In this document: one piece after another, positions 212-60,739 of the stretch
Position numbering within the stretch: the stretch's first letter is position 1
How the letters are laid out: every line of letters starts with the position of its first letter
Assembly (NCBI RefSeq): GCF_016433145.1
Contig: NC_058134.1
Span: forward strand, 196,930,859 to 196,994,858
DNA length: 64,000 nucleotides
Source of the DNA: Gracilinanus agilis
Lineage: Eukaryota
Direction of reading: 5' to 3'
Notes under the pieces: model-generated
What the model saw: only the letters and a program-made list of their open reading frames with translations
Database searches by the model: none
What the model was told of the DNA's origin: nothing
Position numbers and translations under genes: made by a program

Positions 212-3200
212 ACTCCGGGACCCCGCTTCCCAAGTTCGGAAAACAGCAGGGCTGGTAATGACACACCTAATCCTGAAGGACATGGTGAGGGTGAAGGGGC
301 AGGTGAGCGAGATGGCCGTGTTGCTTATTGACCCGGAGCCTGAAGTTGCTGCTCTAGCGAAGAACTTTTTCAATGAGCTGGCTGGCAAGGTGAGAGGGTG
401 AGCCCTCCCGGGNNNNNNNNNNNNNNNNNNNNNNNNNNNNNNNNNNNNNNNNNNNNNNNNNNNNNNNNNNNNNNNNNNNNNNNNNNNNNNNNNNNNNNNN
501 NNNNNNNNNNNNNNNNNNNNNNNNNNNNNNNNNNNNNNNNNNNNNNNNNNNNNNNNNNNNNNNNNNNNNNNNNNNNNNNNNNNNNNNNNNNNNNNNNNNN
601 NNNNNNNNNNNNNNNNNNNNNNNNNNNNNNNNNNNNNNNNNNNNNNNNNNNNNNNNNNNNNNNNNNNNNNNNNNNNNNNNNNNNNNNNNNNNNNNNNNNN
701 NNNNNNNNNNNNNNNNNNNNNNNNNNNNNNNNNNNNNNNNNNNNNNNNNNNNNNNNNNNNNNNNNNNNNNNNNNNNNNNNNNNNNNNCCACCTAACTCTG
801 TCTGCCTCTGTTCCTCTCCCCAGGGGAACGTGGTCTACAATCTCCTTCCTGACATCATAAGCCGCCTATCTGACCCTGAAAATGGGGTAGAGGAAGAACC
901 TTTCCATACCATCATGAGGTGATGCCCTGGACCACAAAGCATCCCCTGAGCTTTCCCTGGGGCCTGGGGGTGGGGGGAACCCCACTAGGAATGTACAACC
1001 AGAGAAGGATAGAGGAGAAAGCTGATCTGTCTTCTAGTACTCCAAGGAATAGATGAAAGATGTTTGTCCTCCTTGGCCCAGGGGGCAGATTATTGGCTTG
1101 ATTTTAAAAGAAAATAACTTTCTAACAAGTAATAAAGGTTTCTAAAGACCTTCATAGAAATGCTAAGAGTAGGGGGAGATAGCTAAGTGGCTCCATGGAT
1201 TGAGAGCCAGGCCTAAAGGCAAGAAGTCCTGCATTCAAATCGGATCTCAGACACTTCCTGGTATGTGAGCCTGGGCAAGTCACTTAACCCCCATTGCCTA
1301 ATGCTCACTGCTTTTCTGTCTTGGAACTGATACTTAGTATTCTTAGACAGAAAGTCAAGGTTTTAAAAAGAAAAAGAAATGCTAGAGTAGCACTTGCCAG
1401 AGATGTTGCAGAGAATATCTTTTGCCTCTCTGACCTACAGACATCTATCCCTTTTTCTCCCTGGACCATGTGTCTCCTTCATGTCTTTCATTTCTAAATT
1501 GTTCCCTTGGTTTCTGTATCCTAGAGAGGCAAGGATATGACGTAAAGCTAAGAGAGGATAGGCCTCAGCCCTTGGGTCAGCCTGAGGGAGCCAGCCACAA
1601 CTCTTCTCTTTCCCATAGGCAACTTCTTTCCTACATCACCAAGGACAAACAGACAGAGAGTCTGGTGGAAAAGCTGTGCCAGAGGTTCAGAACAGCCCGG
1701 TATGCTGCCAGCAGGCTGGAGGGAACCCAGGAGGGAAAGACAGGTCCCACCCCCCCCACCTCCCCTCATCCTGACCCTGGAGCCTCCGTAGAGCTGTGGG
1801 TGACAGGCCCCTAAGGAGCATGGCACAAAGAAGGCTGGGTTTAACATGAGCTTCAGGCAAGGCTTTGTGACTGTGTGGTCTTTGCCAAGTTTATTTGACA
1901 TCTCTGGGCCTTTATCTGTAAGGGAGGGACTTGGATTCAGTGATCTCTTATGTCCCATTCCAGCTCTGGCTTTGAGATCCTAGAACAACAGAGGCACAAA
2001 GGAATGTATCCAGATCCTCATCATTTCTCAGACTCTTATAGTAACTTATAAATTAGGTTTTATCTGGGCAATGAGGTAGCTCAGTGGATAGAGAGCCAGG
2101 CCAGGAGTCAGAGTTCAAATCTGTCTTCAGATACTTTTTAGCTAGGTGACCCTGGACAAGTCACTTAACCCCCATTCATTTCTTCTGCCATGGAACCAGT
2201 ACTTAGTACTGACAAAAGGTAATGGTTTAATCAGTGATGGGCAAACTACAGCTCCAGGGCCATATGTGGCTCCCTGAAATGTTCTATCTGGCCCCTGGAG
2301 ACATTATTCCTAATCTGCAGAATACAATGAGTAGGATACAATAGGATGAAACTTTGGAAGAGTTGTCTTAGAAACAGACTGACAGATGAGCATTTCCTTT
2401 CCTTTGGTCCTCTTTAAAAAAGTTTGCCCGTCACTGGTTTAAACAAAGTTAGGCTCCATGTATTCCATCTACATCTATGTCTAGCCTCCTGACAGCTGCC
2501 AACGTAATATTTGTAAACACACATCTGACTATGTCGTTGCTCTACTCAGGAAGCCTCAATGTATTACAGTTGCCTTTAGATTAAAATACAAACCCATTTG
2601 GGCATCTAAAGACCTCAGTGTGACTGAAGCTTTTATTTCCAGGCTGGTTATACATTTCCCAGCCAGCCTGCATTCTGTTCCTCAGAGCTCATGATCCACA
2701 GCGCCCAGGTTGTCTCCTATGCCTACAACAAACTTTCTCTTTAGCTGAGGCTCTCAGAAACCCTAGTACCCCTCAAGGTTTGGCTCAAGCTATGCTTCCT
2801 CCAGGAGCTCTTTCCTGGATGCTGCTTCCCCCCACCATGTATATGCCTTGTATGCTTACTATGAACATTTCCCCTGTAGCCCTTATCTATGAGCATACAT
2901 ATGCCCAGGAGACTCGGATTCCTTGAGAGTAGCCGCTGTCTCACTGTGCCTGGCACACAGGAAACACTGAGTGGCAAATGCTTCTTAATTCATTGATTTG
3001 ATGCCTGGCTCTCTCTACTCCTCATCAATTCCTCTGTGTCCTCAGGACTGAGAGGCAGCACAGAGACCTGGCCTACTGTCTGTCACTGCTGCCTCTCACA
3101 GAGCGAGGCCTCCGTAAGATGCAGGACAACTTCGAATGCTTTGGAGACAAATTATCTGATGAGACCATCTTCAATGCCTTCCTGGCAGCTGTAGGCAAGC

Positions 3201-5938
3201 TTCGGCGCTGGGCTAAACCTGAGGGCAAGGTGAGTAGGGCCCAGGGCCAATAGATTTATCCCTTCTGCCCTCTGAGCAATGCTAGCACATTCCCAACTGA
3301 GCAAATCAAGCACTTTAGGACTTATTCCCAGACTTGATTATCCATCCAACAGGGCAATAACTGTTTCCGCCCCTTTCTTAATTCTTTCCATTTTTACTTC
3401 AGGCTCTGGTGGATGAATTTGAACAAAAGCTTCGCTCCTGTCACACCCGAGGACTAGATGCAACCCTGCAGCCTGAAAACGATCAAGGTGCTGCTCAGCC
3501 ATCCCAGCCAACGACTAGAGGACCCAGTAGTGGTGCGTGAGACAGCCCAGTGGCATAAATGAGAAAGGCTAGAAATATAGGACAGATTCACAATTTGACA
3601 AAGCCTGTTGAGGAAAACTAGAAAAGCAGTGTAGCAGAAAACTATGTAGAAACTAGCAGCTGACAGCACATACCAAGATAATCTCCAAATGGGTACATGA
3701 CTTACACATTAGACCAGGGGTCGGCAACCTTTATGGCCGTGAGAGCCAAAATGTAATTTTGTGAGAGCTGTGCAGTGCTCACAGTGCTGCTCCTGTAATA
3801 GCGCCTGAAAAAAAATGGCCTTTATGGCTCCTGCAGAAAGAGCCATACATTGCTGACCCCTGCTCTAGAAGAAATCATCTTTCAGATCTATGGATGGGGA
3901 AGAGTTCAGAACTAAACAAGCAAAGAGATTCATAGAACATAACATGGAACATCTTGACTATGGTATGTTTCCACACTAACTGAAACAAACTGAGCTCCAT
4001 TTGAAAATTAAAACAGTTTTGCACACATAAAGCCAGGGTAGCTAAAATTAGAAGAGAAGCAGGTAACTGTGGAGGGAGGCTTTGTATCACATTTATCTGA
4101 TAATGGTCATAGGGAACTGAGTCAAATTTTCAAAAATAAGAGCTATTTCTCAATTATAAATAGTCAAAGGATAAAAACAGGCAGTTTTCAGAGGAAGAAA
4201 TCCAAGCTTTCAATAACTATGAAAAAAAATGCCAGTTAAAGCAACTTTGAGGTTTGGCCTCACCCCTATCAAATTGCCAGTTGGCATAAAAGAGAAAACA
4301 CAAAAAATCCTTGAGTGGAGAAAACAGGTACATTTAATACACTGTGGCCCTATAAATTGACCCAAGGTTCTAGAAAGTAATTTGGAACCATGCCCAAAAA
4401 ATTACCCAACATGCATGCACCCATTGACCCACTAATACCACTACCAGGGCTATAAATCCTGAAGTGGTCTTAAAAAGAGGAAAAGATTCATATGTACAAA
4501 AATAATTATAGCAGCTCTTTGTGATGGCAAAGAACTGGAAGCAGGGTGCCCATCAGTTGAAGCCTGGTTGAACAGTTAGGACACATGAGTATGATGGAGT
4601 CCTGCTGTGCTGAAAGAAATGATGATGGGGGGCAGCTGGGTAGCTCAGTGGATTGCGTCTCTTGACCCCCATTGCCTACCCTTACCACTCTTCTGCCTTG
4701 GAGCCAATACATAGTATTGACTCCAAGAGGGAAGATAAGGGTTTTAAAAAAAAATAATTGATGATGGGGAATTCCTGGTTGCAGAGAAAACATGAAGGGG
4801 AAGACTTACTTGAACCAAGAGAATAATTTCTACAATCACATAATCTTGTAAAAGCAAACCACTCTGAAAGATTCAAGAACTTTGACCAATCCAGAGGACT
4901 AAAAATGTCCCTGACTTGGGGCAGCTGGGTAGCTCAGTGGATTGAGAGCCAGGCCTAGAGACTGGAGGTCCTAGGTTCAAATCCGGCCTCAGACACTTCC
5001 CAGCTGTGTGACCCTGGGTAAGTCACTTGACCCCCATTGCCTACCCTTACCACTCTTCCACCTATAAGTCAATACACAGAAGTTAAGGGTTTAAAATAAA
5101 AAAAAATAATAATTAAAAAAAATGTCCCTGACAGAGGTGATGGCCTCGGGGTTCAGATCAAGATGCATATTTTTGGGATGTGGCCAGTAGGAGAATCTGT
5201 TTGGTTTAACTATGCATGTTTGTTATGAGGGGTTTTGTTTTTTTTCCTTTAAAGGGGCATAGGATAGGAAGAAGAGACTTTCATTAATTTTTTTTTTAAT
5301 TTTTAAAAAGAATGTAGAAAGGGAAAGCCTTGTGACTGAACTGTGATACTCATCTGTCTTATTCCCTTCAGCTGCCTCAGACAATGACTTTGTTACACCT
5401 CCGCCCCGAGGGACTTCTAAACAGCGCCCAAACACCAGAAAGCAAGTTTCTAGAAAGACTACAATCGTCTTTTCCAGTGATGAATCCAGTAACGAAGGTG
5501 AATGTTCCAAATCCCTAAGGTAGTTCTTGGGCCAGGAGGGGAGTGCATGACTGCCCCAGGATTCTGGTGGCAGGGACTACAGAATCATAGATTGTTTAGA
5601 GAGCTGGAAGGGCCATTATGGGTTATCTGGTCCCACCTCTCATTGTATAGCTGAGGCCCATACATAGAGATAAAGTGAGGAGTCTGAGGCCACAGTTAAA
5701 ATTAGAACCTCAGCCTCCCGAATTCCACTTGGTGCTCCTTGTCAGTAGCCGTCTATTTTGGGCGGCCTATTTATTCTTTACATTCGTGCCTCAGCGCTCT
5801 CTCACCCTCCGTTCTTCAGAATGCTCGGCCGAGATGACAGAAGATGATGAGACCCCTAAGAAGACAACCCCTATCCGCCGAGCGTCTACCCGCAGCCAAA
5901 AGGCTTTAAGGCGCCTTCCGCCCATCCCTGTCGTGTAG
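212..5938 (+). CDS. NCAPD2: Condensin complex subunit 1 (CAP-D2), 3' part; gene begins upstream of window
   Basis: GT-AG exons 212-389, 824-918, 1619-1699, 3046-3229, 3403-3532, 5372-5497, 5820-5938 (TAG). Spliced peptide LRDPASQVRKTAGLVMTHLILKDMVRVKGQVSEMAVLLID...GNVVYNLLPDIISRLSDPE...QLLSYITKDKQTESLVEKLCQRF...ASDNDFVTP...AEMTEDDETPKKTTP matches the NCAPD2 C-terminus; phases consistent. Confidence 0.97.
413..787. other. Assembly gap (375 N) inside an NCAPD2 intron
   Basis: Run of N. The flanking exons join in frame, so no coding exon is needed in the gap. Confidence 0.99.
1173..1374 (+). mobile_element. tRNA-derived CORE-SINE (SINE-1_MD type)
   Basis: Degenerate A/B boxes, CORE, A tail; TSD agaaatgcta(a)gagtag 1156-1172 / 1375-1390. 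Confidence 0.85.
2066..2231 (+). mobile_element. CORE-SINE (SINE-1_MD type), tail interrupted by a MITE
   Basis: gtagctcagtggatagagagccagg...gttcaaat...gtcacttaacccc. Confidence 0.8.
2232..2436 (+). mobile_element. hAT-type MITE, family A
   Basis: 16-bp TIRs CAGTGATGGGCAAACT / AGTTTGCCCGTCACTG; near-TSD gtttaa(t)/gtttaaac; homologous to 42987-43190. Confidence 0.85.
3715..3862 (-). mobile_element. hAT-type MITE, family B (internally deleted copy)
   Basis: TIRs CAGGGGTCGGCAA / TTGCTGACCCCTG; flanks cattagac/ctctagaa; reverse-orientation homologue of 43467-43673. Confidence 0.85.
4627..4757 (+). mobile_element. CORE-SINE with internal deletion removing the B box
   Basis: SINE head joins the CORE via cgtctc; TSD tgatgatggg on both sides. 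Confidence 0.8.
4918..5117 (+). mobile_element. Young full-length CORE-SINE (short-tail subfamily)
   Basis: Intact A box TAGCTCAGTGG and B box GGTTCAAATCC; 15-bp TSD aaaaatgtccctgac. Confidence 0.92.
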
Positions 5939-18585: not shown

Positions 18586-34950
<16,365 letters not shown>

Positions 34951-35130: not shown

Positions 35131-38100
35131 TTAGGACTGAGATTTCTGCTTCTTCCTAGGTGGGGGCTGGCTGGAACTAGAAGTCCGAGAGCCTTTGTGG
35201 ACAGGTTTGCCATTCTGGAAACCAGCCTTCTTAGGGGGCTGCTGCTTTGTCTTTTCCTTTCCAGCTGCTCCTAGCTTTGCCTTTGTCTTCCCAGCTCCTA
35301 GCCTCACAAACTTTGCCTTTCCAGCTTGCTTGGGCTTCTTGGCAGATTTAGGGCTGACTTTAGGCCCAGGAACCACTTGCAAATTAGCTACAGAAGGTCC
35401 ATCATTGGGTCTGGAGTCCGTGGAGTCTTCGGGGTTGGCTGCTTCATCATCTGGGGTTGGAGTGAAATGGTTACACAAGTTTAAATGACACTGGGTTAAT
35501 AAAGTAGGAAAAACCAACACAGGTGAGTTTGAAGCAAAGTGCACCAAAGGAGCCAACATTGCACTTAACTGAAGCATGGCATTTTGTACTCCAATGACTT
35601 TGCAAAAGGTACTAAAAAGAGAAAGTTTCTGGGACTTCCTGGGACATTTCTCAGCATTCAAACCAATGATGGCTTTTGAAGACACTATCTTTTCCTCCTG
35701 AGAGCTGGACCTCCAACTTAAAATGCTCAAGAAAATGATGATTTGAAAGTATCTGAGAGGCATCATGATCTAAGGGGTAGAGAATTCACTTTCAAGCCAA
35801 GGAGACCCAAGCTCATTTCCCACCTCTGACACATACTGCCAAAGTCATTTAACCGATTAGTGCTTCAGACAATTCTCCTGGACCATGAACAGCAGAAGTG
35901 AAAGGAAATTCCTTATCCAAGAGTGCCCTGTTGTTGTTCAATTACATTCAAGTCTTCATGACTCCATTTGGGTTTTCTTGACAGAGATACTGGAATGGTT
36001 TGCCACTTCCTTCTCCAGCTCATTTTACAGGTGAGGAAACTGAAGCAAACAGGGTTAAATGGCTTGCCTGGAGTCACATAGATAACATGTGTCTGAGGCC
36101 AAACTTGAACTCAGATTTTCTTGACTCTGGGCCTGATACTCTACATTCATCTTGCCACTTCACTGCCCTATGCCAATGTAAATCACAGGTCTAGTCCCTA
36201 TCCCCTAGGAACTTAGATGTTCCCAAAAACCAGTTGGGCCTGCCTCGTGCTTGATAGTTCTTAGTCTCAAGTGCCAATTTATCATCTAGTAAAGAAGGAT
36301 AAGTTCAGGTAATCCAGAAAGGAAGGGAAACCACAACTCTTTAACTCTTGGGATTCAATTAGCTACATGAACAAAACAAATATAACCATCTACTTTGGAG
36401 GGAGAAGGAAGTAAAATTCCATTCTGATTTGAGTTTCTGACCTCAAAAACGCACCAATCTGAAAGAGACTGCTGTAGTTGGATTCTTGGTCAGAAGATCT
36501 AGTTTTGAGTCCTAGCTGACAATTTCTAGCTATCTGAGTCTTTGCAAATCATTTAGCCACTCTTCAGTCTTAGTTTCCTGATTAAATGATGATACCTGTA
36601 ATCCTACCTAACTCATAGTAAGAAAAGCACTAAGTTTAAGGCACCAAGGAAATGATTAGGAATAATGCACACAGGAAGAATTCTTTCATTCAAAAAGGGT
36701 AGAGTGTGGGAGAGCCACAGAGTTATTCCCAAGCAAGAGACACAGGGAAATGAGTCACAACTTTGTGGATAGAGAACTTGAACAAATGAGAAGTAGCAGA
36801 GATATTTCTTACTTTTCTTAGACTGAGGTATAGCATTGGAAAATTTCTTGAACTTGGCAATAAAGAAGCCATCCATGTTGTGTGTATGAGGGTAGAAACG
36901 TCGGGTAGAGCGAAGTGTGGGATGGAAGCGCCGCTCTCGGAAATGAGTAAAGCCCTCTTGACCAAAGTCTAGCCCTGTAGGCACCAGCCGCACATTCCTC
37001 TTCTTCAGGGCATACTCTACTACCCATTCATTTTCTTCTACCTGAGGGGGGTGGGTGACATGAGGGGTAAGGGGAAAAACTAGGAGTTAGTCTTAGCTGA
37101 AGGGGTCCCAAGAATAAGCTGTCCCTAGCCATTTCTGCCCACATTCCAACTTAGCAGCCTTACCGTAATGGAGCAAGTACAGTAGACAATATAGCCTCCA
37201 GTCTTAGAAGCAGCATTAACAGAATCAATAGCACTCAGGAGCAATTCCTTCTGGATGTGGGCACATCTTTTGATGTCTTTCTCATCCTTTCCAGGAAATG
37301 GGAAGAAAAATTTTGGTGTTTAAACTGATTTGTCCTCCCAAAATAGTATAACTTGCTGAGGATGACATTTTCCCCATGCTTCCACACCAATACCCTTCCC
37401 TTTCCTTCAAAATGTCTGTTCAACCTTTTTTTCCTCCTCACCTTGTTAGTTTTCACAGATGGGTCCTTAGAGATGACACCAGTGCCACTACATGGGGCGT
37501 CAAGTAATACTCGGTCAAATCCTCCCACCACCTGGGCAGAAAGATGATGAAGAGGTGGTCAAAGGAACTTCTACCTATCCAGAATGGCTCCCCACCCCTG
37601 AGCTCTTATAGGCAAAAGATAAAGCCACAACAAAATGAAACATCTAGAATGGTGTTAGTGGACAAGGAAGCAATTAAGAGTATTGGGAGAGGGGCAGCTG
37701 GGTAGCTCAGTGGATTGAGAGCCAGGCCTAGAGACTGGAGGTCCTAAGTTCAAATCTGGCCTCAGACACTTCCCAGCTGTGTGACCCTGGGCAAGTCACT
37801 TGACCCCCATTGCCCATCCTTACCACTCTTCCACCTAGGAGCCAATACACAGAAATTAAGGGTTTAAAAAATAAAAAATAAAATAAAAAAAGAATATTGG
37901 GAGATATAAGAGAAAAACAATGGTGGCTCTTGGGTCTAACCTTAGGGAAATGACGCCCATCATCATGGCTGATGATGGTGTTGGTGACCCCCAACCGGTG
38001 CAGATTGCCTACAACACTCTTGAGGCGCTCAGCATTAGCATCATTGGCAAGGATCACTCCTGTATTCTTCATTAGTTGGGCTGTAGGTGAAAAGCCATCA

Positions 38101-41100
38101 TCCTTCAGTTGTTCCCATGCCCCTATACCAATCACCTGTCCACCTTGATACTAGTTCCAACCAGAAATCCACTGAGTTAAATCCCAGCATCTCACCACTT
38201 AACTCCACACGCAATCACCCAGTAACTCAACCAGTATCCTAGATGGCTATATTCCCACTTCCTACTCCCACAGTAAAATCTATGGGTCTGATTTTCACTT
38301 TTACTGAAGTACTTTCTGGCCTGAAAAATGACCTTGGGCACCTATGAGCTCACCTTACACTTAAAAGCAAAGTATTAAATGAATGTGTGTACTTCTTGCA
38401 CTGAATGTTTTAAATGTCCCTGTTCTGCCACTTCCCTACCTATGTAGCTAGTCTTGCCACCAGGGGCACAACACATATCCAAAATACGCTCATGTTCCTG
38501 TGGTGCCAAGGCAATGACAGGCAGCATGCTGGAAGCACCCTGAAGAATGTAGTGTCCTGCCAGGTATTCAGGGGTAGCCCCTGGGAAGACAAAAAAAGAG
38601 GCAGATTAGAATAGGTTCAGTGAGATTCCACAAATATAAAGCCCTATCTAAATGACACTGGGATCACACATATGAAAGACAGGAGCTGACAACCTTGAGA
38701 AAGGGTAAGAAATGTACACAAATAGCTACATCCCATGGACACTGTGGGATGAGAAATTGCTTTCGCCTTTCTAGGAATGGGAAAATACTTGTGCAAAGGT
38801 AAGGAAGCAGGAAAGGCAGAATAAGTCCAGAGAAATAGAAGTCACTCACCAATGGGCACAGAAGAGTCATACACCACCAGTCCAGTCTTTGACCATTTAC
38901 CCAAGGGATCCAAATTCACCCCACGGTTGATCAAGGCCTGTGAGAGGATAGATCATGTCAAGGTTGCAGGCATCATGGCTTCCAGGGCAGAGGAAAGACT
39001 TCAAGACAGCCTGGCATTTGGAAATGTGGCTCTAATAAAGTTCACACTTCATTTTCACAACAGAAAAATGACTCTATCTATAATCATCTTTGTTTTCTTT
39101 CTCATGTTTATGTTCCACATTTTAATGGAAATGATTTATTTTTGTAGCCAAGCACAGTGCTTTGCATATAGGAAACACTTGATAATTTTTTATTGAACTA
39201 AATTAACTAGAACAACCTTTCTTCCTAATCATCTGTCCCTAAGAATACTCAAGGCACAGCCTCTCTCACCAAAAGCATCACTAATACCCTATTGCAGGTT
39301 TCAGTGTTGTCCAACAAAGCACTGAGTCATCACTTATGTATCACAGAACCACATTAATGGCAGGGACCCCCTTTAATTGAGATGTTATGAATGGTACCTC
39401 TTCTCCAACCATTCTGCTTCATACAAGATTTCATTCCTTGTAGATCTCTCTTTACACTTCATTCAGCAAACCACAGCCCAGCTGAAGGGCCTACCAACTT
39501 GTTTTTGAATAGGCCTTATAAATATGTTATATTTAAAAATTTTAAGTGGTACAAAACAGGCCAACCACTGGTCTACACTGGCAAAAAGTAGCCAGGCAAT
39601 ATGCTGGGCACAATGCAGGACAGGCCTTTTCTCCCCAGTCTTAACCCATCAAATTTGAGACATGAGAAAGAATTTCAAGGACCATAAAAATCCAACTTAT
39701 GCAAAAAAGAAATCCTCACTATAAAACTATCTCAATGGTTGTATCATCCAGTGGCATTCAAGTCTGTTTGAAGACCTCCAAGAAAGGGAGGAACCCACCT
39801 CTACTCAAGATAATCCTCTCCACTTCTGAACAGCTTTCACTGTTTAGTGTTTCCTGACATCAAACCTAAATTGGACTCTTTACAAATTCCATCCATTGCT
39901 TGAGGTTTTAATTTCTGAGGCAAGCAGAGTAAGTTTAATTCCTTCTCCATTTGACAGTCCTTCAGATATTTGAAGATGGCTATTCTCTCTCCTTCTTCCA
40001 AAGCCAAGTTTAAAAAGTATTCCCTACTTCCCTAGCCCCTGAATTAATGACTATGCCCATGAAGAATAGGTAAAATATCCCCGAGTTTATTTTAAAATGG
40101 ACCTTCCTTTAAGATACTTCCCAATCAACCCTACCTGAGCCAGATCACGTCGACGGGTTTTCAGGGTATTGGTCCTGAGGGTGATGGGTCGAGGAACCTC
40201 ATTAGCCTCTAGGAACTCCACTAGCTTCAAGGAAAAAAAGGAGATTAGTGTGGCCAGGGACTGAGTATAATAGAACATGAGCAACAACAGGGAACTCAAT
40301 AGCTTGAATACAGAGTAGTAAGAAAGTGAGTAAGAAAAGGATGACAAGTAGGATGGCAAGTAGGATGGCTGGCATCACCAATACCTCAGAAAGAGGGAAA
40401 ATGTCCATTATTTTGCCAATCAGGAAGTCTCCATAGGAGTAGTATGTAGCCAAGTCTTTCCGAAGCCTGCTTAGGTATTCAGTCCGAGACCGACCTTCTT
40501 CTCTCTGAGAACCAAAATCCCGTAGCACCCCAACAATGTCCTGGATTCGCTGGTGTACAGACTGCAAGTCTGGAGCCTGGGCACGTGACCATATTAAGGA
40601 ACAATGTCCAACATAACCTGACCCATCCCTATGTATTCCAAATACCCTTCACCATATCCTCTACCTCCTTTGTCTCATACAAGTATACAATACAGACACT
40701 CCTCCTCCAGTATCTGTCCTAGTAGGATATTCTCTTGTTCTATCTCCTTGCCAGTGGGCAATACAAATTTTTCATCCTTTTCCACATTGATCTGAAGATC
40801 TTCATTTGCTTCATCATCGTTTTTGGATTTTGGCTGGGGAGACAGTTCCTCCTCCTCCTCATCAGTGTCTTCTGAACTCCAGTGATCCCTGTAAATTACA
40901 ACAAATCAGAAGGGGGACCTTAAGTATTAAGAAATCCTAGCTCCTTCCTAGCCACTTCCACCCTAACTCTTGACCATGCCCATGATTAGAATTTCTAAGA
41001 CTTACAGAGTTTCAGTTTCCTGGGCCCTCTGCTTCCGAGCAGCCTTCTCAATGGGCAGGAGCTGTGGACAGAGAGAGAAGACAAAGACTTAAATAATGTC

Positions 41101-44100
41101 AACCTCACCTTCTTTAACACATCACTTTGCTCTGACCTCTTTCAAGGATTGTTGTGAGAACCTAGGCATATGATTCTAAATGAGATGTAAAAGACTGCAA
41201 ACTTTAAAGTGACACAAACTCTATTATTATTATTATTATTAATTATACACCTGCACAAGTCAGAAGGAAGAGACAGAGGACGGTGGGATGAATCAATCCA
41301 AAAAGGAAACTTGATGGACTTAAGAGCCCTGGTTCTCTGGGAGGCAAGGAAAAATTCTTTTAAAAAATTAGGGAAATAATTCAGTGAAAAGGAACTCATC
41401 CTGAAAAAGTAAAACTACGGTAAAGCTATAATTATCAGAACTATCTGATATTGGATTAAACAAAAATCAATGAAAAAATAAAGAGAAACAAGGAATAGAG
41501 CCAAATGTAAAAGATTAGTGTTTGATAAACACAAGATAAATTAAATAGCAATATGGCAAGAAGAAATTCATTTAGTTCCACGTCTCAGACCAACCAGATC
41601 TAGAATATTAATTTTTAACTTAAGACGAAAGAAAAAAAGCTTATGAAACTTTTTAGCTATCAAAGAAATGGAAGAAATTATTGGAGATGGAGTTGTTTTG
41701 AGAAATTATATATATAAATGAGATTTGATCACATAAAAACAAAAATACATTTTTGATCACAAAAAAAAAAAACAAAAAAAACCACCAGGGGCGGGATGAA
41801 TAGGTCTTGACAAATAAATGGCTGACAACCTGAATCTTAATCTATGACTTCCCAAAGAATCCCTGAAGAATCTAAACAATTTCCCAAGGAAAACACTAAA
41901 CAAAAATTGCTGACACCTTGAAAAATTGTTCAAAATCTCTAATGATCAGAGCAACACAAATTAAAACAACTTTAAACCACCAAATTGGCAAATTAGTAAT
42001 AAATCTACAAATTCAATGTTGCTAAAGCTATAAGTAAGGAGGTGTGTGTTGTTCTAATTGAATATAAGTGCAATCTTGGGGGAGCAACCTGTTAAAAATA
42101 ACTACAAAATATAGCATATTTTTATTTAAAAGAGAAAGACACACAAAAATATTCATAATTGTTTTACCTTTAAAAAGAAAAAGCTAAAAATATTTTCCAT
42201 ATCCAACAACTAGGTAAAGGTAAATTATAGTATATAAATCTAGTGGAATATTATTGAAACAAATATGGACACTTCGAATACAAAAAGTAAACAATGGGAT
42301 TTAGAAAGTAAAATTAAGAGCATACTATACAGTATACATTATGCACAAATCATGAAAAAAATAAATAAATAAAACCTTTCCACACAAGTAGGAAAAAGTA
42401 TCACTTAATACAGGGGCTAATCAACTTACCAGTTCTTTGATTAAATTTTACATTATAAAATTTGGTGTGTTCTTTGTTCACTTATAATATTAAGATATTA
42501 ACACATTTATAGCACTTTTGTCATAACAACCATCTGAGGAATAGTACAAATGTTCATTTCCCCATTTTATAGACGAGATAGGCTAGGACATCAAGTAAAC
42601 TGCATGTGTCACAAAGCCACTAAGTGTCCAAAGCAGGGCAGACCTCAAATCAACAAATGATCATTAAGAGTCTACTGTAATAGAGGCACTGTTCTAAACA
42701 AGCCAAGGGCTATTCAAGCTTACATTCTTACAGAGGATATAGAGGATGTAGGTGGATCTACTCACATAGAAAATAAATACAAAGTTTTGGGAGAGAGGAG
42801 TGTCTTAATAACTGGAAGAACCAAGAAACTTCAAAAAAGGTAATGTTTGAGTTATGAGAAACAGGGATTCCAAAGATTGGAAGTGAAGTAGGGTGTGCAT
42901 TTCATTTCCCAATGAAAACTCCCTTCACTGAGCAGAGTTTGGTGACTTACGATAATACAACTAGTACAATGGTTTATACTCTAAGCCAGTGACAGGCAAA
43001 CTAAGGTCCTCAGGCCAGATGCAGTCCCCTGAAATGTTCTATCCTGCCAAGGGACATTATTCCTAATCTAACGAATACAATGAGCAGGATACAATACAAT
43101 GAAACTTTGAAAGAGTTGCCTTAGAAACAGACTGACAGATGAACATTTCCTTTCCTTTGGCCCCCTCTTTAAAAAGTTTGCCCATCACTGATCTAGGCCA
43201 GTGTTGGTGAACCTTTTTAAGATCGCCTACCTTGCCTAAATGCAACTTCAAGCGGCCTACAAGACACCTGCTTCCACACCCCACACCCCCCCACTACCCC
43301 AGAGAAGTTGAGGAAGTGCTTGTATTGGGTGGCTGGACAGAGGGGTGAGACATGCAAAAAATGTCCTTGGGCATTGTGGAGAAGGGCACCAAGCAGCCCC
43401 CTCTAGGCCCCCATGGATGCCACACCTTTGCCAACACAGCTCTAGGCTATAGATCACACTATAGACCAGGGGTTGGCAACGTATGGCTCTCGAGCCATAT
43501 CTGGCTCTTTTGAGGGCCAGATAAGGCTCTTTCTGCAGGAGCCATAAAGTCAATTTTTTTTCAGGCGCTGTTACAGGAGCGCACACTGTGAGCACTGTAC
43601 GGCTCTCACGAAATTACATTTTAAAAAATGTGGTATTTATGGCTCTCATGGTCAAAAAAGTTGCCGACCCCTGCTATAGACTATAGACAATCATGTGGAC
43701 ACAGAGTATTTCAAAATAGCTTTAATGCAAAAAAGTTGGAGGAGAGGGGATGGGAGTGTTTCTATTTGGTCCTAGAGGTAATAGGGAACTAAAGGGAGTT
43801 TGTTTCCAGTTCAGTAAAATCATTTTGGTAAGTGTGTATCAGACTAGAGAGAGGTTTGAGGTAAGGAGGTCAAAAAGAAAGTTATTGGAAATAGACCTGG
43901 TAAGAGGTGATGAGGGCCTGAGAATGGTGGCTGAGTAAATAGAAAGAATTGTTTTCAGATATAATAGAAAGAGAAATGACAAGATTTGGCAACTGACTGT
44001 ATATGTGTGGTGAATGACAGTGAGGGCTTGAAGATGGCACGAAGGTATCAAGTCTGGATGACTAAGGGAGGATGGTATTCTCAACAATAAAATAGAAGCT

Positions 44101-46332
44101 TGAAAGAATAGTGGACCTGTGGGGGGAAAAGATGTGTTGTTTTGGACAAGTTCAATTTTGGTGATAAGGAAGGGATTGGAGTTCAGGAAAGCAAACAGGG
44201 CTTGAATATAGACATTTCAGAGTCTTCTTAGAGATAATAAGTGAACTCAAGGGAGTTGATACGGTCACCCAGAAAAAGCAAAAAGAAATAGAGAGGGTGC
44301 AGAATATAACTTTGGACATGGCATTGATAATGAAAAAGGTCCCAAATCTTCCCCACTACAAGTCTAACACTCTTTCTATAATTCTACTATTTCTCATTTT
44401 AAAAATAAGACATTTTAAGAACTTAATATTCACAAACAAATTTTCTTCACAATAACCCACAAGAGAAATATTCTGGGGAAGGGCCAGATAGATAACTTAA
44501 AAAAAAGTAAAGTCCCAATGAAAACTCTCTCCACTGAGCACATAATTTAGATAACTTGCTTATGGTAACATAACTAGTATATGTCAAAAGTAGGATTTAT
44601 GAACCTAGGCCTTCCTGATGCTAAGGACCACTTCTCTCAATCCACTTAATCATGCTACTCTCACTATTACAGTGAGTATTATGAGGTAGATACAGGTATT
44701 ATCATCCTCATTAATACAATGAGGAAACAGACTCTTGAGAGATTATATAGCTTATTTATGGCTGCATAACTACTTAAGTGTCAGAGGTAGGAATTAAACT
44801 GGGGCCTCCCCATAAGCAAGTCCAATGGTTCTTCCTACTAAGGTTAAAGCAATAACTTTTTTTTTTTAAATTAAAACAAATTTTAAGTTAACAAAATCCC
44901 ATCTTGAATGTTTACCTCATCATCTTCATCAGTTTCTTCTTCTGAGGCGACACCATAATCATCTACCATATCATCTTCACTCTCCATAGAAGCCCAGTCA
45001 TCCCCTTCACTCCTTGCATCATTGACCTCAGAATCCTCCTCTTCATCACTACTATGAGGGGGAGCTGGGCGCTTTTTGCCCCTAGCAGGTCCAAGTAATG
45101 CTTTATTTCCAATTTTGAGCCCAGGAGCCTGGGGTCCTTTCTTTTGTGAGGACTGGATAGCACCTATAGAGAACCACAGGTGTTAAAACAGCATCTTCTC
45201 CAGCTAAAGATGTCAAGGGCTCCTAACCCCAACTGGACTAACCCAGCAATCCCACTCCCTCCACCAATCTCCAAACCATTTCTACCTTCAAATATATTCC
45301 ATCATCTTGCATCTCATCCTTGAATTACTCTATTAGTCTACACTCATCACTTGCTTTAAAATCTGTTTGCAAACTAAAGTCCCCAGCACCCTATTTTCAA
45401 ACTAACCTTTTGTAAGAGGCTTTGGACTAGGAGATAGTTTCTTCTTTTCAGGAGTCCCTGCAGACTCTGATCGTCTTTTGGCTGCCCTGAAAAAGTAAAA
45501 AAGAATAAAAGAATGGAAATATGCTTCTCTCTCAACCTGCTTTCCTCCTAGCTTAAAAGTGATGGAGCTTCCCATTAGCATCTACATCCATCTGTGCCCA
45601 GGAGCTCTAAGATGAACTTCCTATCAGCTTACATTATCTAAAGGAGGGTAGCTATTAGCAAGCATCCCCACACTTGACTATCCCAAACTCACCTTTTCCT
45701 GGCACGGCTAGAGAGCCTCTTCCCATTTTCATTGACAGCTATAAAAAGATAGGAACAAGAATAAGAAGTCATAGAGGAAATATGCCGGAGAAGAGACCAC
45801 AAGAACAAGATGGAAAAGAGATTTTGACGCTAAGAGTATAGAAATTCAACACAACAAAAGCTCCAGCTAACCATGCCTCAACTATCATAAAACTGTGGGG
45901 AAGTGGAGGTTTGAAACACATTAGAATCCTGGCCAAAATGGTAACAGGAAAATTTAAAGATAACTGAGTAGACCTTCAAAGATCCCTTTCTAGACTTCTC
46001 TCTTATTGGCACTTCAGTCTATTATCAGTTGCTGCAGAGAAAAAAGCTCAGTACAAAAATGAACAGAGTTGTTCTGAGAACTGAGAAAATCAGTTAAGTT
46101 GACGTGCAGAAGGAGCTGACGCAACGTAAAATGCTAGAGTACAGGCTAAGTGGGAAAGCGGATAAACGATGCTGAGGGCCAAGAGCAACAGGCACAGAAG
46201 GAACCAAGAGAGGGGTTCTCTCTCACCGGAGGGCAGGAATTTGGCGAGCTCGGTCTCAGCGCCCTTCTGTTTCCGGGCCTTTCGGCCAGGCCCGCGCTTC
46301 TCCTTCTTGGTGGGGTCCAATTTGCGCCCCAT
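35131..46332 (-). CDS. NOP2: NOP2/NSUN1 (p120) nucleolar rRNA m5C methyltransferase, 704 aa
   Basis: Coding exons (minus) 46332-46227, 45738-45693, 45486-45407, 45163-44916, 41061-41006, 40888-40731, 40584-40385, 40224-40135, 38937-38850, 38580-38440, 38080-37941, 37531-37442, 37286-37164, 37041-36813, 35450-35131 = 2115 nt. MGRKLDPTK start; [17 protein letters not shown] and YCTCS motifs intact. Non-coding exon 1 ends 46596. Confidence 0.97.
35925..36170 (-). mobile_element. MAR1-type SINE (CORE plus RTE-like tail)
   Basis: gactccatttgggttttcttgacagagatactggaatggtttgccacttccttctccagctcattttacag. Confidence 0.75.
37691..37890 (+). mobile_element. Young full-length CORE-SINE (short-tail subfamily)
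   Basis: Intact A/B boxes; TSD aaga(g/a)tattgggaga. Confidence 0.92.
39650..39980. mobile_element. Ancient CR1/L3-like remnant (approximate)
   Basis: gtttgaagacctccaag...ccacttctgaacagct...cctgacatcaaacctaaatt phrases typical of old CR1 3' ends. Confidence 0.45.
40585..40730 (-). other. U12-type AT-AC intron of NOP2
   Basis: 5' ATATCCTA, branch TTCCTTAAT (40601-40593), 3' CAC. This junction gives in-frame EQE-S-AQAPDL. Confidence 0.92.
41250..42400 (+). mobile_element. Old, highly degraded L1 ORF2 remnant in NOP2 intron 5
   Basis: A-rich, L1-like phrases (aaatctctaatgatcagagcaacacaaattaaaacaact). Confidence 0.55.
42987..43190 (+). mobile_element. hAT-type MITE, family A
   Basis: TIRs CAGTGACAGGCAAACT / AGTTTGCCCATCACTG; flanks ctctaagc / atctaggc. 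Confidence 0.88.
43199..43439. mobile_element. hAT-type MITE, family C
   Basis: Imperfect TIRs CAGTGTTGGTGAA / TTTGCCAACACAG; flanks atctaggc / ctctaggc (7 of 8 match). Confidence 0.75.
43467..43673 (+). mobile_element. hAT-type MITE, family B
   Basis: TIRs CAGGGGTTGGCAAC / GTTGCCGACCCCTG; perfect 8-bp TSD CTATAGAC. Confidence 0.92.
43690..44310 (-). mobile_element. LINE2 remnant (approximate)
   Basis: gatttggcaactgactgtatatgtg, tgttgttttggacaagttcaattt: L2-like. Confidence 0.5.
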
Positions 46333-46595
46333 GATGCTGGGGCAAAGAAAAAAGGTTCATGCATCAAGGAGCAGACGTGGGGCAGGCGAGGCAGAAAAGG
46401 GGGCTCCCACACCCCCGACATCGCTCGCTCTCCCTCCTCCTGAGATCCCAGCTCTCCCTGGCACCCCAGGGTAAGCCGGAGAACCCAGAGGCCTCCTTCC
46501 CCCAGCTCCACCACAGCTCCGAAGCCCCAAGGACGAAAGTCCTCAGGGGCCCCTCAGCAGACCCAGTCAACTAGCTACTCCGAACCGAGGCTTAC

Positions 46596-52266: not shown

Positions 52267-60739
<8,473 letters not shown>

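What the first reader, a model, noticed from the sequence alone, without database searches (positions are those of the whole stretch)
42979..43688. Three different hAT MITE families stacked at regenerated NTCTAG-type target sites in NOP2 intron 5
Seen: [ctctaagc]-MITE A (42987-43190)-[atctaggc]-MITE C (43199-43439)-[ctctaggc]-11 bp-[ctatagac]-MITE B (43467-43673)-[ctatagac]tatagac. A and C share one 8-mer as a flank, and all three elements have different TIRs and interiors. Known: Charlie-type hAT transposases make 8-bp TSDs and prefer NTCTAGAN-like sites. Inference: each insertion duplicates the preferred site and so creates the next landing pad, a self-propagating hotspot used by at least three families. 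The order and divergence of TSDs would record the sequence of DNA-transposon waves, some of which are known to have reached opossums by horizontal transfer.
Basis: partly seen in the sequence, partly recalled or inferred. Interest (0 to 1): 0.7.

Follow-up and report, generated by a model that had tools for sequence, protein, structure and literature searches.

The report
Three hAT transposon fossils, one shared target
Three short dead "cut-and-paste" transposons sit side by side in an intron of the opossum-like NOP2 gene, two of them sharing one duplicated 8-base target site, which is a real but ordinary result of a transposase that prefers a specific target sequence.

Summary
A (42987-43190), C (43199-43439) and B (43467-43673) each have CAG..CTG-type inverted ends and 8-bp flanking duplications. 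A and C are separated by exactly one 8-mer (atctaggc) that matches both outer flanks (ctctaagc, ctctaggc). A and B are abundant repeat families. C is a weaker, partly repeated one.

- Only one re-use of a duplicated target is documented, the A/C pair.
- B used a different site, CTATAGAC, 11 bp further on.
- The three TIRs are not "all different". They are variants of one theme, CAGKGDYSGGCAA, and C's left end is 18/22 like A's right end.
- The two TSD substitutions are each private to one copy, so the order of insertion cannot be read from them.
- No link to horizontally transferred families could be tested.

The mechanism is already published for P-element and hobo tandem dimers (McGurk and Barbash 2018): an insertion keeps its target and makes a second copy, which invites a second insertion. 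A rough estimate suggests such pairs are expected about once per few windows of this size.

One detail is mildly interesting. Without the elements, the site is a short run of CTNTAGR 7-mers, including a perfect CTATAGA tandem abutting B. These may be excision footprints.

The scan's other notes on this genome report similar hAT dimers elsewhere; I did not check them.

The parts
42979..42986 (.). T1: left copy of the 8-bp target (ctctaagc), left TSD of A
   Evidence: It differs from the inferred ancestral CTCTAGGC by G>A at position 6.
42987..43190 (+). MITE A, 204 bp, TIR CAGTGAcaGGCAAACT / CAGTGATGGGCAAACT
   Evidence: TIR (I5). A full-length 84% copy lies at 2232-2436. Thousands of X1 contigs lie on it at 80% likeness or more.
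43191..43198 (.). T2: the shared 8-mer (atctaggc), right TSD of A and left TSD of C
   Evidence: There are exactly 8 nt between the two facing TIRs. It matches T1 at 6/8 and T3 at 7/8, including the off-consensus GC at positions 7-8.
43199..43439 (+). Element C, 241 bp, weak TIR (CAGTGTTGG / CTGTGTTGG). Its left end is homologous to the A-type right end.
   Evidence: (I1, I9). There is no second copy in the window. In one search only 43286-43383 is clearly repeated and 43237-43285 is at single-copy level. The joints 43224>43313 and 43347>43417 show shorter relatives elsewhere.
43440..43447 (.). T3: right copy of the target (ctctaggc), right TSD of C
43448..43458 (.). 11-bp spacer tatagatcaca. 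Together with base 43447 it contains a further target-like 8-mer, CTATAGAT.
43459..43466 (.). Left TSD of B (ctatagac)
   Evidence: 8/8
43467..43673 (+). MITE B, 207 bp, TIR CAGGGGTtGGCAAC / CAGGGGTCGGCAAC, with repeated subterminal GGCTC/GAGCC(AT) motifs, an internal 17-nt hairpin (43492-43529) and 7 CpGs
   Evidence: (D1, I2-I4). A 79% copy lacking the hairpin segment lies at 3715-3862 on the minus strand. Thousands of X1 contigs lie on it.
43674..43681 (.). Right TSD of B (ctatagac)
43682..43688 (.). Extra tatagac, which forms a perfect period-7 tandem (CTATAGA CTATAGA C) with B's right TSD. It may be a hAT excision footprint or a pre-existing tandem.
   Evidence: It is the only period-7 target-like tandem in the window; shuffles give about 0.5.
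41062..44915 (-). NOP2 intron that holds the block, between coding exon 4 (ends about 44916) and coding exon 5 ([11 protein letters not shown], starts about 41061). The limits are approximate.
   Evidence: ORF reading. NOP2 identity from Pfam PF01189 on four exon ORFs and a match to human NOP2 chain 8fkt_SY at E 5.7e-45.

Best explanation
The block is a cluster of three fossil non-autonomous hAT (Charlie/MER1-like) transposons in a NOP2 intron.

The ancestral site was a short run of hAT-preferred 8-mers: ATA-CTCTAGGC-TATAGATCACA-CTATAGAC-TATAGAC.

1. One element, A or C, integrated at CTCTAGGC. The transposase's 8-bp staggered cut and the gap repair duplicated that 8-mer.
2. Later a second element with a closely related TIR integrated exactly into one of the two copies. 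This gave target-A-target-C-target with three copies of the 8-mer. Two point substitutions followed.
3. B integrated independently at the neighbouring CTATAGAC.

Nothing beyond the sequence preference of the transposase is needed. A duplicated target is still a good target, so double insertions are an expected by-product.

Shown: the anatomy, the repeat nature of A and B, and the target preference of both families. Inferred: the order of events, and that the same or related transposases moved A, C and B.
For: - Anatomy: exactly 8 nt lie between the facing TIRs of A and C. That 8-mer matches both outer flanks at 6/8 and 7/8, and the outer flanks match each other at 7/8. All three share the off-consensus GC at positions 7-8.
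- TIR+TSD-bounded units are far above chance: 3 in the window against 0-1 in shuffles.
- A and B are separate families. Independent solo copies lie at 2232-2436 and 3715-3862, and 42,132 contig records of run X1 lie on the stretch, nearly all on A and B.
- The block is not one composite consensus. The 43237-43285 part of C is at single-copy level, and several contigs join a hAT right end directly to a B-type left end without C (table 5).
- Target preference of these same families: most of the listed loose ends at A's right edge (43195 and 43196, against 43190) and at B's left edge (43462, against 43467) run 5-6 nt into the flank. So other copies also sit in xTCTAG / TAGAC flanks (table 7).
- The ancestral site ATA-CTCTAGGC-TAT fits the published extended hAT motif WWN-NTYTARAN-NWW.
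- The empty-site reading has 4 target-like 8-mers in 34 bp, against 1.12 per kb in the window.
- The same mechanism is documented for P-element and hobo dimers, with an 8-nt TSD between the TIRs.
Against: - C is a weak element. Its TIR is good for only 9 nt, it has no second copy in the window, and its ends are not visibly multi-copy.
- No empty, one-element or two-element state of the locus was seen. Only one sequencing run was on offer, so the stepwise history is inferred.
- The genome-wide rate of TSD-sharing pairs could not be measured, so 'expected from preference alone' rests on a rough estimate.
- After the first insertion the re-used 8-mer had lost the AT-rich flank on one side. That should make it a somewhat poorer target than the native site.
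Confidence: 0.75

Rival explanations
1. A-atctaggc-C formed as a dimer somewhere else and then transposed here as one composite unit, using A's left TIR and C's right TIR. On this reading only the outer pair ctctaagc/ctctaggc is the TSD of the event at this locus.
For: The outer flanks match 7/8, which is better than A's own pair at 6/8. A's and C's TIRs are of the same type, so one transposase could use the outer ends. First-stage notes on other windows of this genome describe two-MITE composites under one outer TSD (unchecked).
Against: The middle 8-mer shares the off-consensus GC at positions 7-8 with both outer copies, which is expected only if all three descend from one local 8-mer. One search shows no sign of a multi-copy A-C unit: 43237-43285 is at single-copy level, and only the local contig is listed as bridging the A/C junction.
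Confidence: 0.1
2. The second insertion was drawn in by the resident element rather than by the 8-mer. Transposase bound to the resident TIR or subterminal sites tethers an incoming transpososome (homing or local hopping), so that related elements pile up next to each other.
For: A, C and B have related TIRs, and three elements lie within 700 bp. About ten X1 contigs join a hAT right end to a B-type left end within about 7-21 nt at other loci (table 5).
Against: The insertion is exactly in register with the 8-bp TSD, which sequence preference predicts and tethering does not. B's site is a good target in its own right. The recurrence cannot be normalised. This reading does not exclude the main one.
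Confidence: 0.1
3. 43199-43439 is not a transposon, and the third copy of the 8-mer together with the CAGTG..CACAG ends is coincidence. On this reading there is no target re-use at all.
For: The TIR is weak, there is no second copy in the window, and much of the segment is not visibly repeated.
Against: A 7/8 copy of the 8-mer directly preceded by an 8/9 inverted match to the bases that directly follow the middle 8-mer has a joint chance of order 1e-5 (my calculation). C's left 22 nt are 82% like A's right end (I1). The core 43286-43383 is repeated, and contigs with shorter versions exist (tables 2 and 5).
Confidence: 0.03
4. Pure chance adjacency under insertion that is random with respect to sequence.
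For: With very many windows scanned, rare coincidences will turn up.
Against: With about 8 hAT MITEs per 64 kb, the expected number of exact TSD-sharing pairs per window under uniform insertion is about 1e-3 (my estimate). A third element within 20 bp is rarer still. The families show a clear target preference.
Confidence: 0.02

Closest known systems
Tandem TE dimers formed by double insertion at one target (P-element and hobo in Drosophila melanogaster; bacterial IS dimers): McGurk and Barbash 2018, PMC5932611
   Same: Two TIR elements are separated by exactly one TSD-length (8 nt) spacer that matches the family's target consensus. [quoted passage not shown]
   Different: Here the partners have different interiors (A and C) and face each other as fixed, decayed fossils in a marsupial-type genome. 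They are not young same-family head-to-tail dimers that are polymorphic in a population, and there is no expansion into an array.
Mammalian hAT-Charlie / MER1-type non-autonomous elements with NTCTAGAN target duplications (Smit and Riggs 1996; refined motif in Levy et al. 2010, PMC2836564)
   Same: 8-bp TSDs, CAG..CTG termini, a central TA/CTAG in the target, AT-rich positions flanking the ancestral A/C site, and lengths of about 200 bp.
   Different: The family names could not be assigned because no Dfam or Repbase was available. Links to OposCharlie1 or SPIN were not tested.
Insertion hotspots of hAT elements inside older repeats (Levy et al. 2010), and clustered or nested MITEs in plants (Jiang and Wessler 2001, from my own knowledge)
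   Same: Sequence preference concentrates independent insertions at a few positions.
   Different: Here the re-used position is the duplicated target itself, outside the resident element, rather than a motif inside it.
hAT excision footprints (Ac/Ds, Tam3: both TSD copies are kept with a base or two lost or changed at the join; from my own knowledge)
   Same: CTATAGAC+TATAGAC next to B is two copies of the 8-mer minus one base, which is the classic footprint shape.
   Different: No excised element is known for this locus, and slippage or an older tandem is equally possible.

Membership tests
hAT superfamily non-autonomous element (MITE) | 8-bp target site duplication | tested here: met
   A 6/8, C 7/8, B 8/8. 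Other copies in the window: 57430-57609 at 8/8, 3715-3862 at 5/8, and 2232-2436 at 7/8 with a 1-nt register ambiguity.
hAT superfamily non-autonomous element (MITE) | Short terminal inverted repeats beginning CAG / ending CTG | tested here: met
   A 14/16, B 13/14, C 8/9 only. The motif CAGKGDYSGGCAA has 12 matches in the window against 1.45 expected.
hAT superfamily non-autonomous element (MITE) | Target consensus NTCTAGAN / TYTARA with a central TA | tested here: met
   The targets are CTCTAGGC and CTATAGAC. The flanks of other A and B copies extend through xTCTAG / TAGAC (table 7). The motif is from PMC2836564.
hAT superfamily non-autonomous element (MITE) | Multi-copy family with conserved ends | tested here: inconclusive
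   Met for A and B. For C only the core 43286-43383 is clearly repeated, and the ends cannot be separated from the pile-ups on A and B.
hAT superfamily non-autonomous element (MITE) | Derivation from, or mobilisation by, an autonomous hAT transposase-coding element with the same ends | not testable with these tools
   No repeat library and no further sequence of this genome was available.
Double-insertion TE dimer (McGurk and Barbash type) | The spacer between the two elements equals the TSD length and derives from the insertion site | tested here: met
   The spacer is 8 nt and matches the outer flanks at 6/8 and 7/8, including off-consensus positions 7-8.
Double-insertion TE dimer (McGurk and Barbash type) | Both partners are copies of the same family, head to tail | tested here: not met
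   A and C share no interior similarity. Only their TIRs are related, and the ends that face each other across the spacer are homologous ends (I1).
Horizontally transferred opossum hAT families (OposCharlie1, SPIN) | Sequence identity of ends and interior to the OC1 or SPIN consensus | not tested
A literature search for the TIR strings found only unrelated primers.

The most novel reading that the evidence does not exclude
The short period-7 runs of target-like words next to these elements are stacked excision footprints. Two such runs were seen: CTCTAGG-CTATAGA-tcaca-CTATAGA-CTATAGA-C here, and ATCTAGG-ACTAGGC-CCTAGGG between two hAT ends at another locus in run X1. On this reading, repeated insertion and excision of hAT elements builds small arrays of the transposase's own preferred target and so makes lasting multi-family landing pads. 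Such sites would record visits by elements that are no longer present.
Probability: 0.2. Interest if true: 0.45.

Novelty: new member of a known kind. Interest (0 to 1): 0.2.

Why it matters
It matters little by itself. It is a clean, easily read vertebrate example of double insertion into a duplicated hAT target, between two different non-autonomous families. It shows that families with related TIRs shared one target preference.

If TSD-sharing pairs were counted genome-wide and compared with a target-preference model, the excess or deficit would show whether a target next to a resident TIR is as good as a native one. Such pairs would also give unambiguous relative ages for DNA-transposon waves in marsupials, taken from the divergence of the elements rather than from their TSDs.

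There is no sign of any effect on NOP2.

Tried and rejected
- Looked for orthologous or polymorphic empty sites in public reads. Only one run holds the stretch, and it carries the same filled arrangement, so there was no test.
- Tried to name the families. A literature search for the TIR strings returned only unrelated primer matches.
- Asked whether the block is a structured RNA or another known non-coding family. Rfam gave only two sub-threshold lncRNA-fragment hits. Rejected.
- Asked whether TSD divergence orders the insertions. Rejected, because both substitutions are private to one copy.
- Tried to turn the A-end-to-B-start joints into an enrichment figure. Rejected, because most rows of tables 5 and 7 are not shown, contig depth is not copy number, and a B-type right end is about 80% like A's right end, so the left partner's family is uncertain.
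- Earlier-findings searches by sequence and by 'shared TSD' words were blank.

Full report
**What is there**

- ctctaagc (42979-42986)
- element A (42987-43190)
- atctaggc (43191-43198)
- element C (43199-43439)
- ctctaggc (43440-43447)
- eleven bases, tatagatcaca
- ctatagac (43459-43466)
- element B (43467-43673)
- ctatagac (43674-43681)
- tatagac (43682-43688)

A has 16-nt inverted ends at 88% (I5). B has 13/14 inverted ends and a perfect 8/8 duplication. C has only CAGTGTTGG / CTGTGTTGG (8/9) before the match decays.

A strict scan asked for CAG..CTG ends with at least 11/14 TIR matches and at least 6/8 TSD matches. It finds three elements in the 64-kb window: A, B and a further one at 57430-57609. 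Twenty shuffles gave 0-1.

Contigs assembled independently from run X1 bridge every junction of the block with 0-2 differences (table 8, records 1, 6, 7, 8). The arrangement is therefore not an assembly slip. That run may be the assembly's own source.

**Are they three repeat families?**

A has a full-length solo copy at 2232-2436, 84% identical, flanked by GGTTTAAT / GGTTTAAA-like words.

B has a solo copy at 3715-3862 on the minus strand, 79% identical and lacking about 40 nt. That segment covers most of the 17-nt hairpin at 43492-43529. The joints 43487>43528, 43490>43536 and 43493>43540 show that this short form is common.

At 80% likeness, 42,132 contig records of X1 lie on the 1.45-kb stretch, almost all on A and B.

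C is different:
- It has no second copy in the window.
- The bin 43237-43285 is at the level of the unique flanks.
- Only 43286-43383 is clearly repeated.
- A few contigs show shorter relatives (joints 43224>43313 and 43347>43417).

C is still a bounded TIR+TSD unit. By my calculation, a 7/8 copy of the 8-mer preceded by an 8/9 inverted match to the bases that follow the middle 8-mer has a joint chance of about 1e-5. Its left 22 nt are 82% like A's right end, including the subterminal CTTTTTAA (I1).

So 'three families' is fair for the interiors. 'Different TIRs' is not: all six ends fit CAGKGDYSGGCAA, which has 12 matches in the window against 1.45 expected by chance.

B also carries repeated subterminal GGCTC/GAGCC(AT) words in both orientations (D1, I2, I4). 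These look like hAT transposase-binding repeats, which is an inference.

**Context**

Four ORF pieces on the minus strand between 36.6 and 38.6 kb match Pfam PF01189. One of them matches human NOP2 (PDB 8fkt chain SY) at E 5.7e-45.

From the ORFs, the coding exons upstream of the block are:
- [12 protein letters not shown]... (about 46.2 kb)
- [14 protein letters not shown] (about 45.7 kb)
- [10 protein letters not shown]... (about 45.45 kb)
- ...KKGPQ...DEDDE (ends about 44916)

The next coding exon downstream is [11 protein letters not shown], at about 41061-41011. The block therefore lies in a 3.85-kb intron between coding exons 4 and 5. 'Intron 5' is right only if there is a non-coding first exon, which I could not check. 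A first-stage note places GAPDH at about 16 kb in this window, which agrees with the known GAPDH-NOP2 neighbourhood. That neighbourhood is my own knowledge.

**How it most likely arose**

hAT transposases cut the target with an 8-bp stagger, and repair duplicates the 8-mer. The published preference is NTCTAGAN. Levy et al. refined it to WWN-NTYTARAN-NWW with the central TA most conserved (PMC2836564).

With the elements and the extra TSD copies taken out, the local sequence reads ...TTTATA-CTCTAGGC-TATAGATCACA-CTATAGAC-TATAGAC-AATC.... The A/C site, ATA-CTCTAGGC-TAT, fits the extended motif except at position 7.

That 34-bp stretch holds four target-like 8-mers. The window as a whole has 1.12 T[CA]TAG[AG] words per kb. 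The site was therefore a dense cluster of good targets before anything landed in it.

The same preference is visible for these very families. In one search, table 7, most listed loose ends at A's right edge lie at 43195 and 43196 (273 + 359) rather than at 43190 (368). At B's left edge, more lie at 43462 (441) than at 43467 (358). So the flanks of other copies also read xTCTAG and TAGAC.

Given that preference, the three copies of one 8-mer around A and C are what a second integration exactly into one TSD copy of the first element would leave. All three copies share the off-consensus GC at positions 7-8. That argues for descent from one local 8-mer rather than mere similarity through preference.

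B is a separate event at a neighbouring site. It is not an insertion into a target regenerated by A or C.

**What cannot be read from the block**

The inferred ancestral 8-mer is CTCTAGGC. The left copy has a private G>A and the middle copy a private C>A. Neither change groups two copies, so the TSDs do not say whether A or C came first.

There are weak hints on age:
- In the listed rows, table 3, this A copy departs from the majority letter at about 10 of 204 sites, and B at about 5 of 207.
- B keeps 7 CpGs and a perfect TSD.

B may therefore be the youngest. The table is truncated and weighted by contig depth, so this is only suggestive.

**Is it more than expected?**

The window holds about 8 hAT-type MITE copies.

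Under insertion blind to sequence, I estimate about 1e-3 exact TSD-sharing pairs per window.

Suppose instead that about half of insertions go to T[CA]TAG[AG]-like words, as the loose-end rows suggest, and that a TSD beside a TIR is as good as a native site. The same arithmetic then gives roughly 0.2 pairs per window. Both figures are rough inferences. They do show that plain target preference is enough, and no special hotspot mechanism is needed.

One search, table 5, lists about ten contigs that join a hAT right end (43190-43200) to a B-type left end (43459-43467) at other loci. Their junction positions differ, so such neighbours recur and arose independently. I could not normalise this count. 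The left partner could be a B-type end, because B's right end is about 80% like A's.

**Comparison with what is known**

McGurk and Barbash (PMC5932611) found that P-element tandem dimers carry exactly 8 nt between the elements. The consensus of those 8 nt, GTCTAGAG, equals the P-element target motif. An intact hobo (hAT) tandem carried an 8-nt word between its TIRs. They state the principle outright: an insertion preserves its target while generating a new one, which enables further insertions.

The new points here are modest: the partners are different non-autonomous families, they are old and fixed, and the host is a marsupial-type genome.

**One detail worth keeping**

B's right TSD is followed by tatagac, which gives a perfect period-7 tandem, CTATAGA-CTATAGA-C. 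This is the only period-7 tandem of a target-like word in the window; shuffles give about 0.5 per window (a period-6 ATATAGA pair lies at 22662). A further CTATAGAT lies 5 bp upstream of B's left TSD.

Two copies of an 8-mer minus one base is the classic shape of a hAT excision footprint, from my own knowledge. At another locus, table 5c, shows ATCTAGG+ACTAGGCCCTAGGG between two hAT ends, again three CTAGG cores at period 7.

This could mean that insertion-excision cycles add copies of the target. Slippage or an older tandem would explain it equally well, and I give the footprint reading about 0.2.

**Verdict**

The mechanism is already described. Interest is low.

First-stage notes on other windows of this genome describe two-MITE hAT composites. 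They agree that dimers are common here, but I did not check them.

Noticed in passing
window 24087-24226: A 59-bp mini-MITE with A-type ends (CAGTGATGGGCAAAT...TTTGTCCATCACTG, 24087-24145) is followed after ccttgagc by a second, inverted A-like half element that ends in a TIR at 24214-24226. Its inner end is decayed. It resembles the 'two inverted mini-MITEs' composites noted by first readers in other windows of this genome.
   Followed up: partly
window 57430-57609: A 180-bp hAT-type MITE of a fourth family (TIR CAGTGRTTCCCAAA, 13/14) with a perfect 8-bp TSD, GTATAGGC.
   Followed up: partly
window 3715-3862 (minus strand) and joints 43487>43528, 43490>43536, 43493>43540: Family B exists in a long form and a short form. 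The short form lacks about 40-46 nt, covering most of the 17-nt internal hairpin at 43492-43529, and seems common in the genome.
   Followed up: partly
window 43972-44020: This segment is moderately repeated in run X1. Two contigs join a hAT right end plus 7 nt (43197) directly to 43972, so another repeat may start there. No TIR is obvious by eye.
   Followed up: no
window 43169-43220: The facing TIRs of A and C form a 22-nt near-palindrome (82%) around the 8-nt shared target. This head-to-head junction is intact, although such junctions in hobo dimers are often deleted (PMC5932611).
   Followed up: no
window 413-787: A run of 375 N, either an assembly gap or a masked stretch.
   Followed up: no
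window 36616-46356 (minus strand): NOP2 coding exons are readable as ORF pieces, from [12 protein letters not shown]... at about 46.2 kb to the RsmB/F methyltransferase exons at 36.6-38.6 kb.
   Followed up: partly
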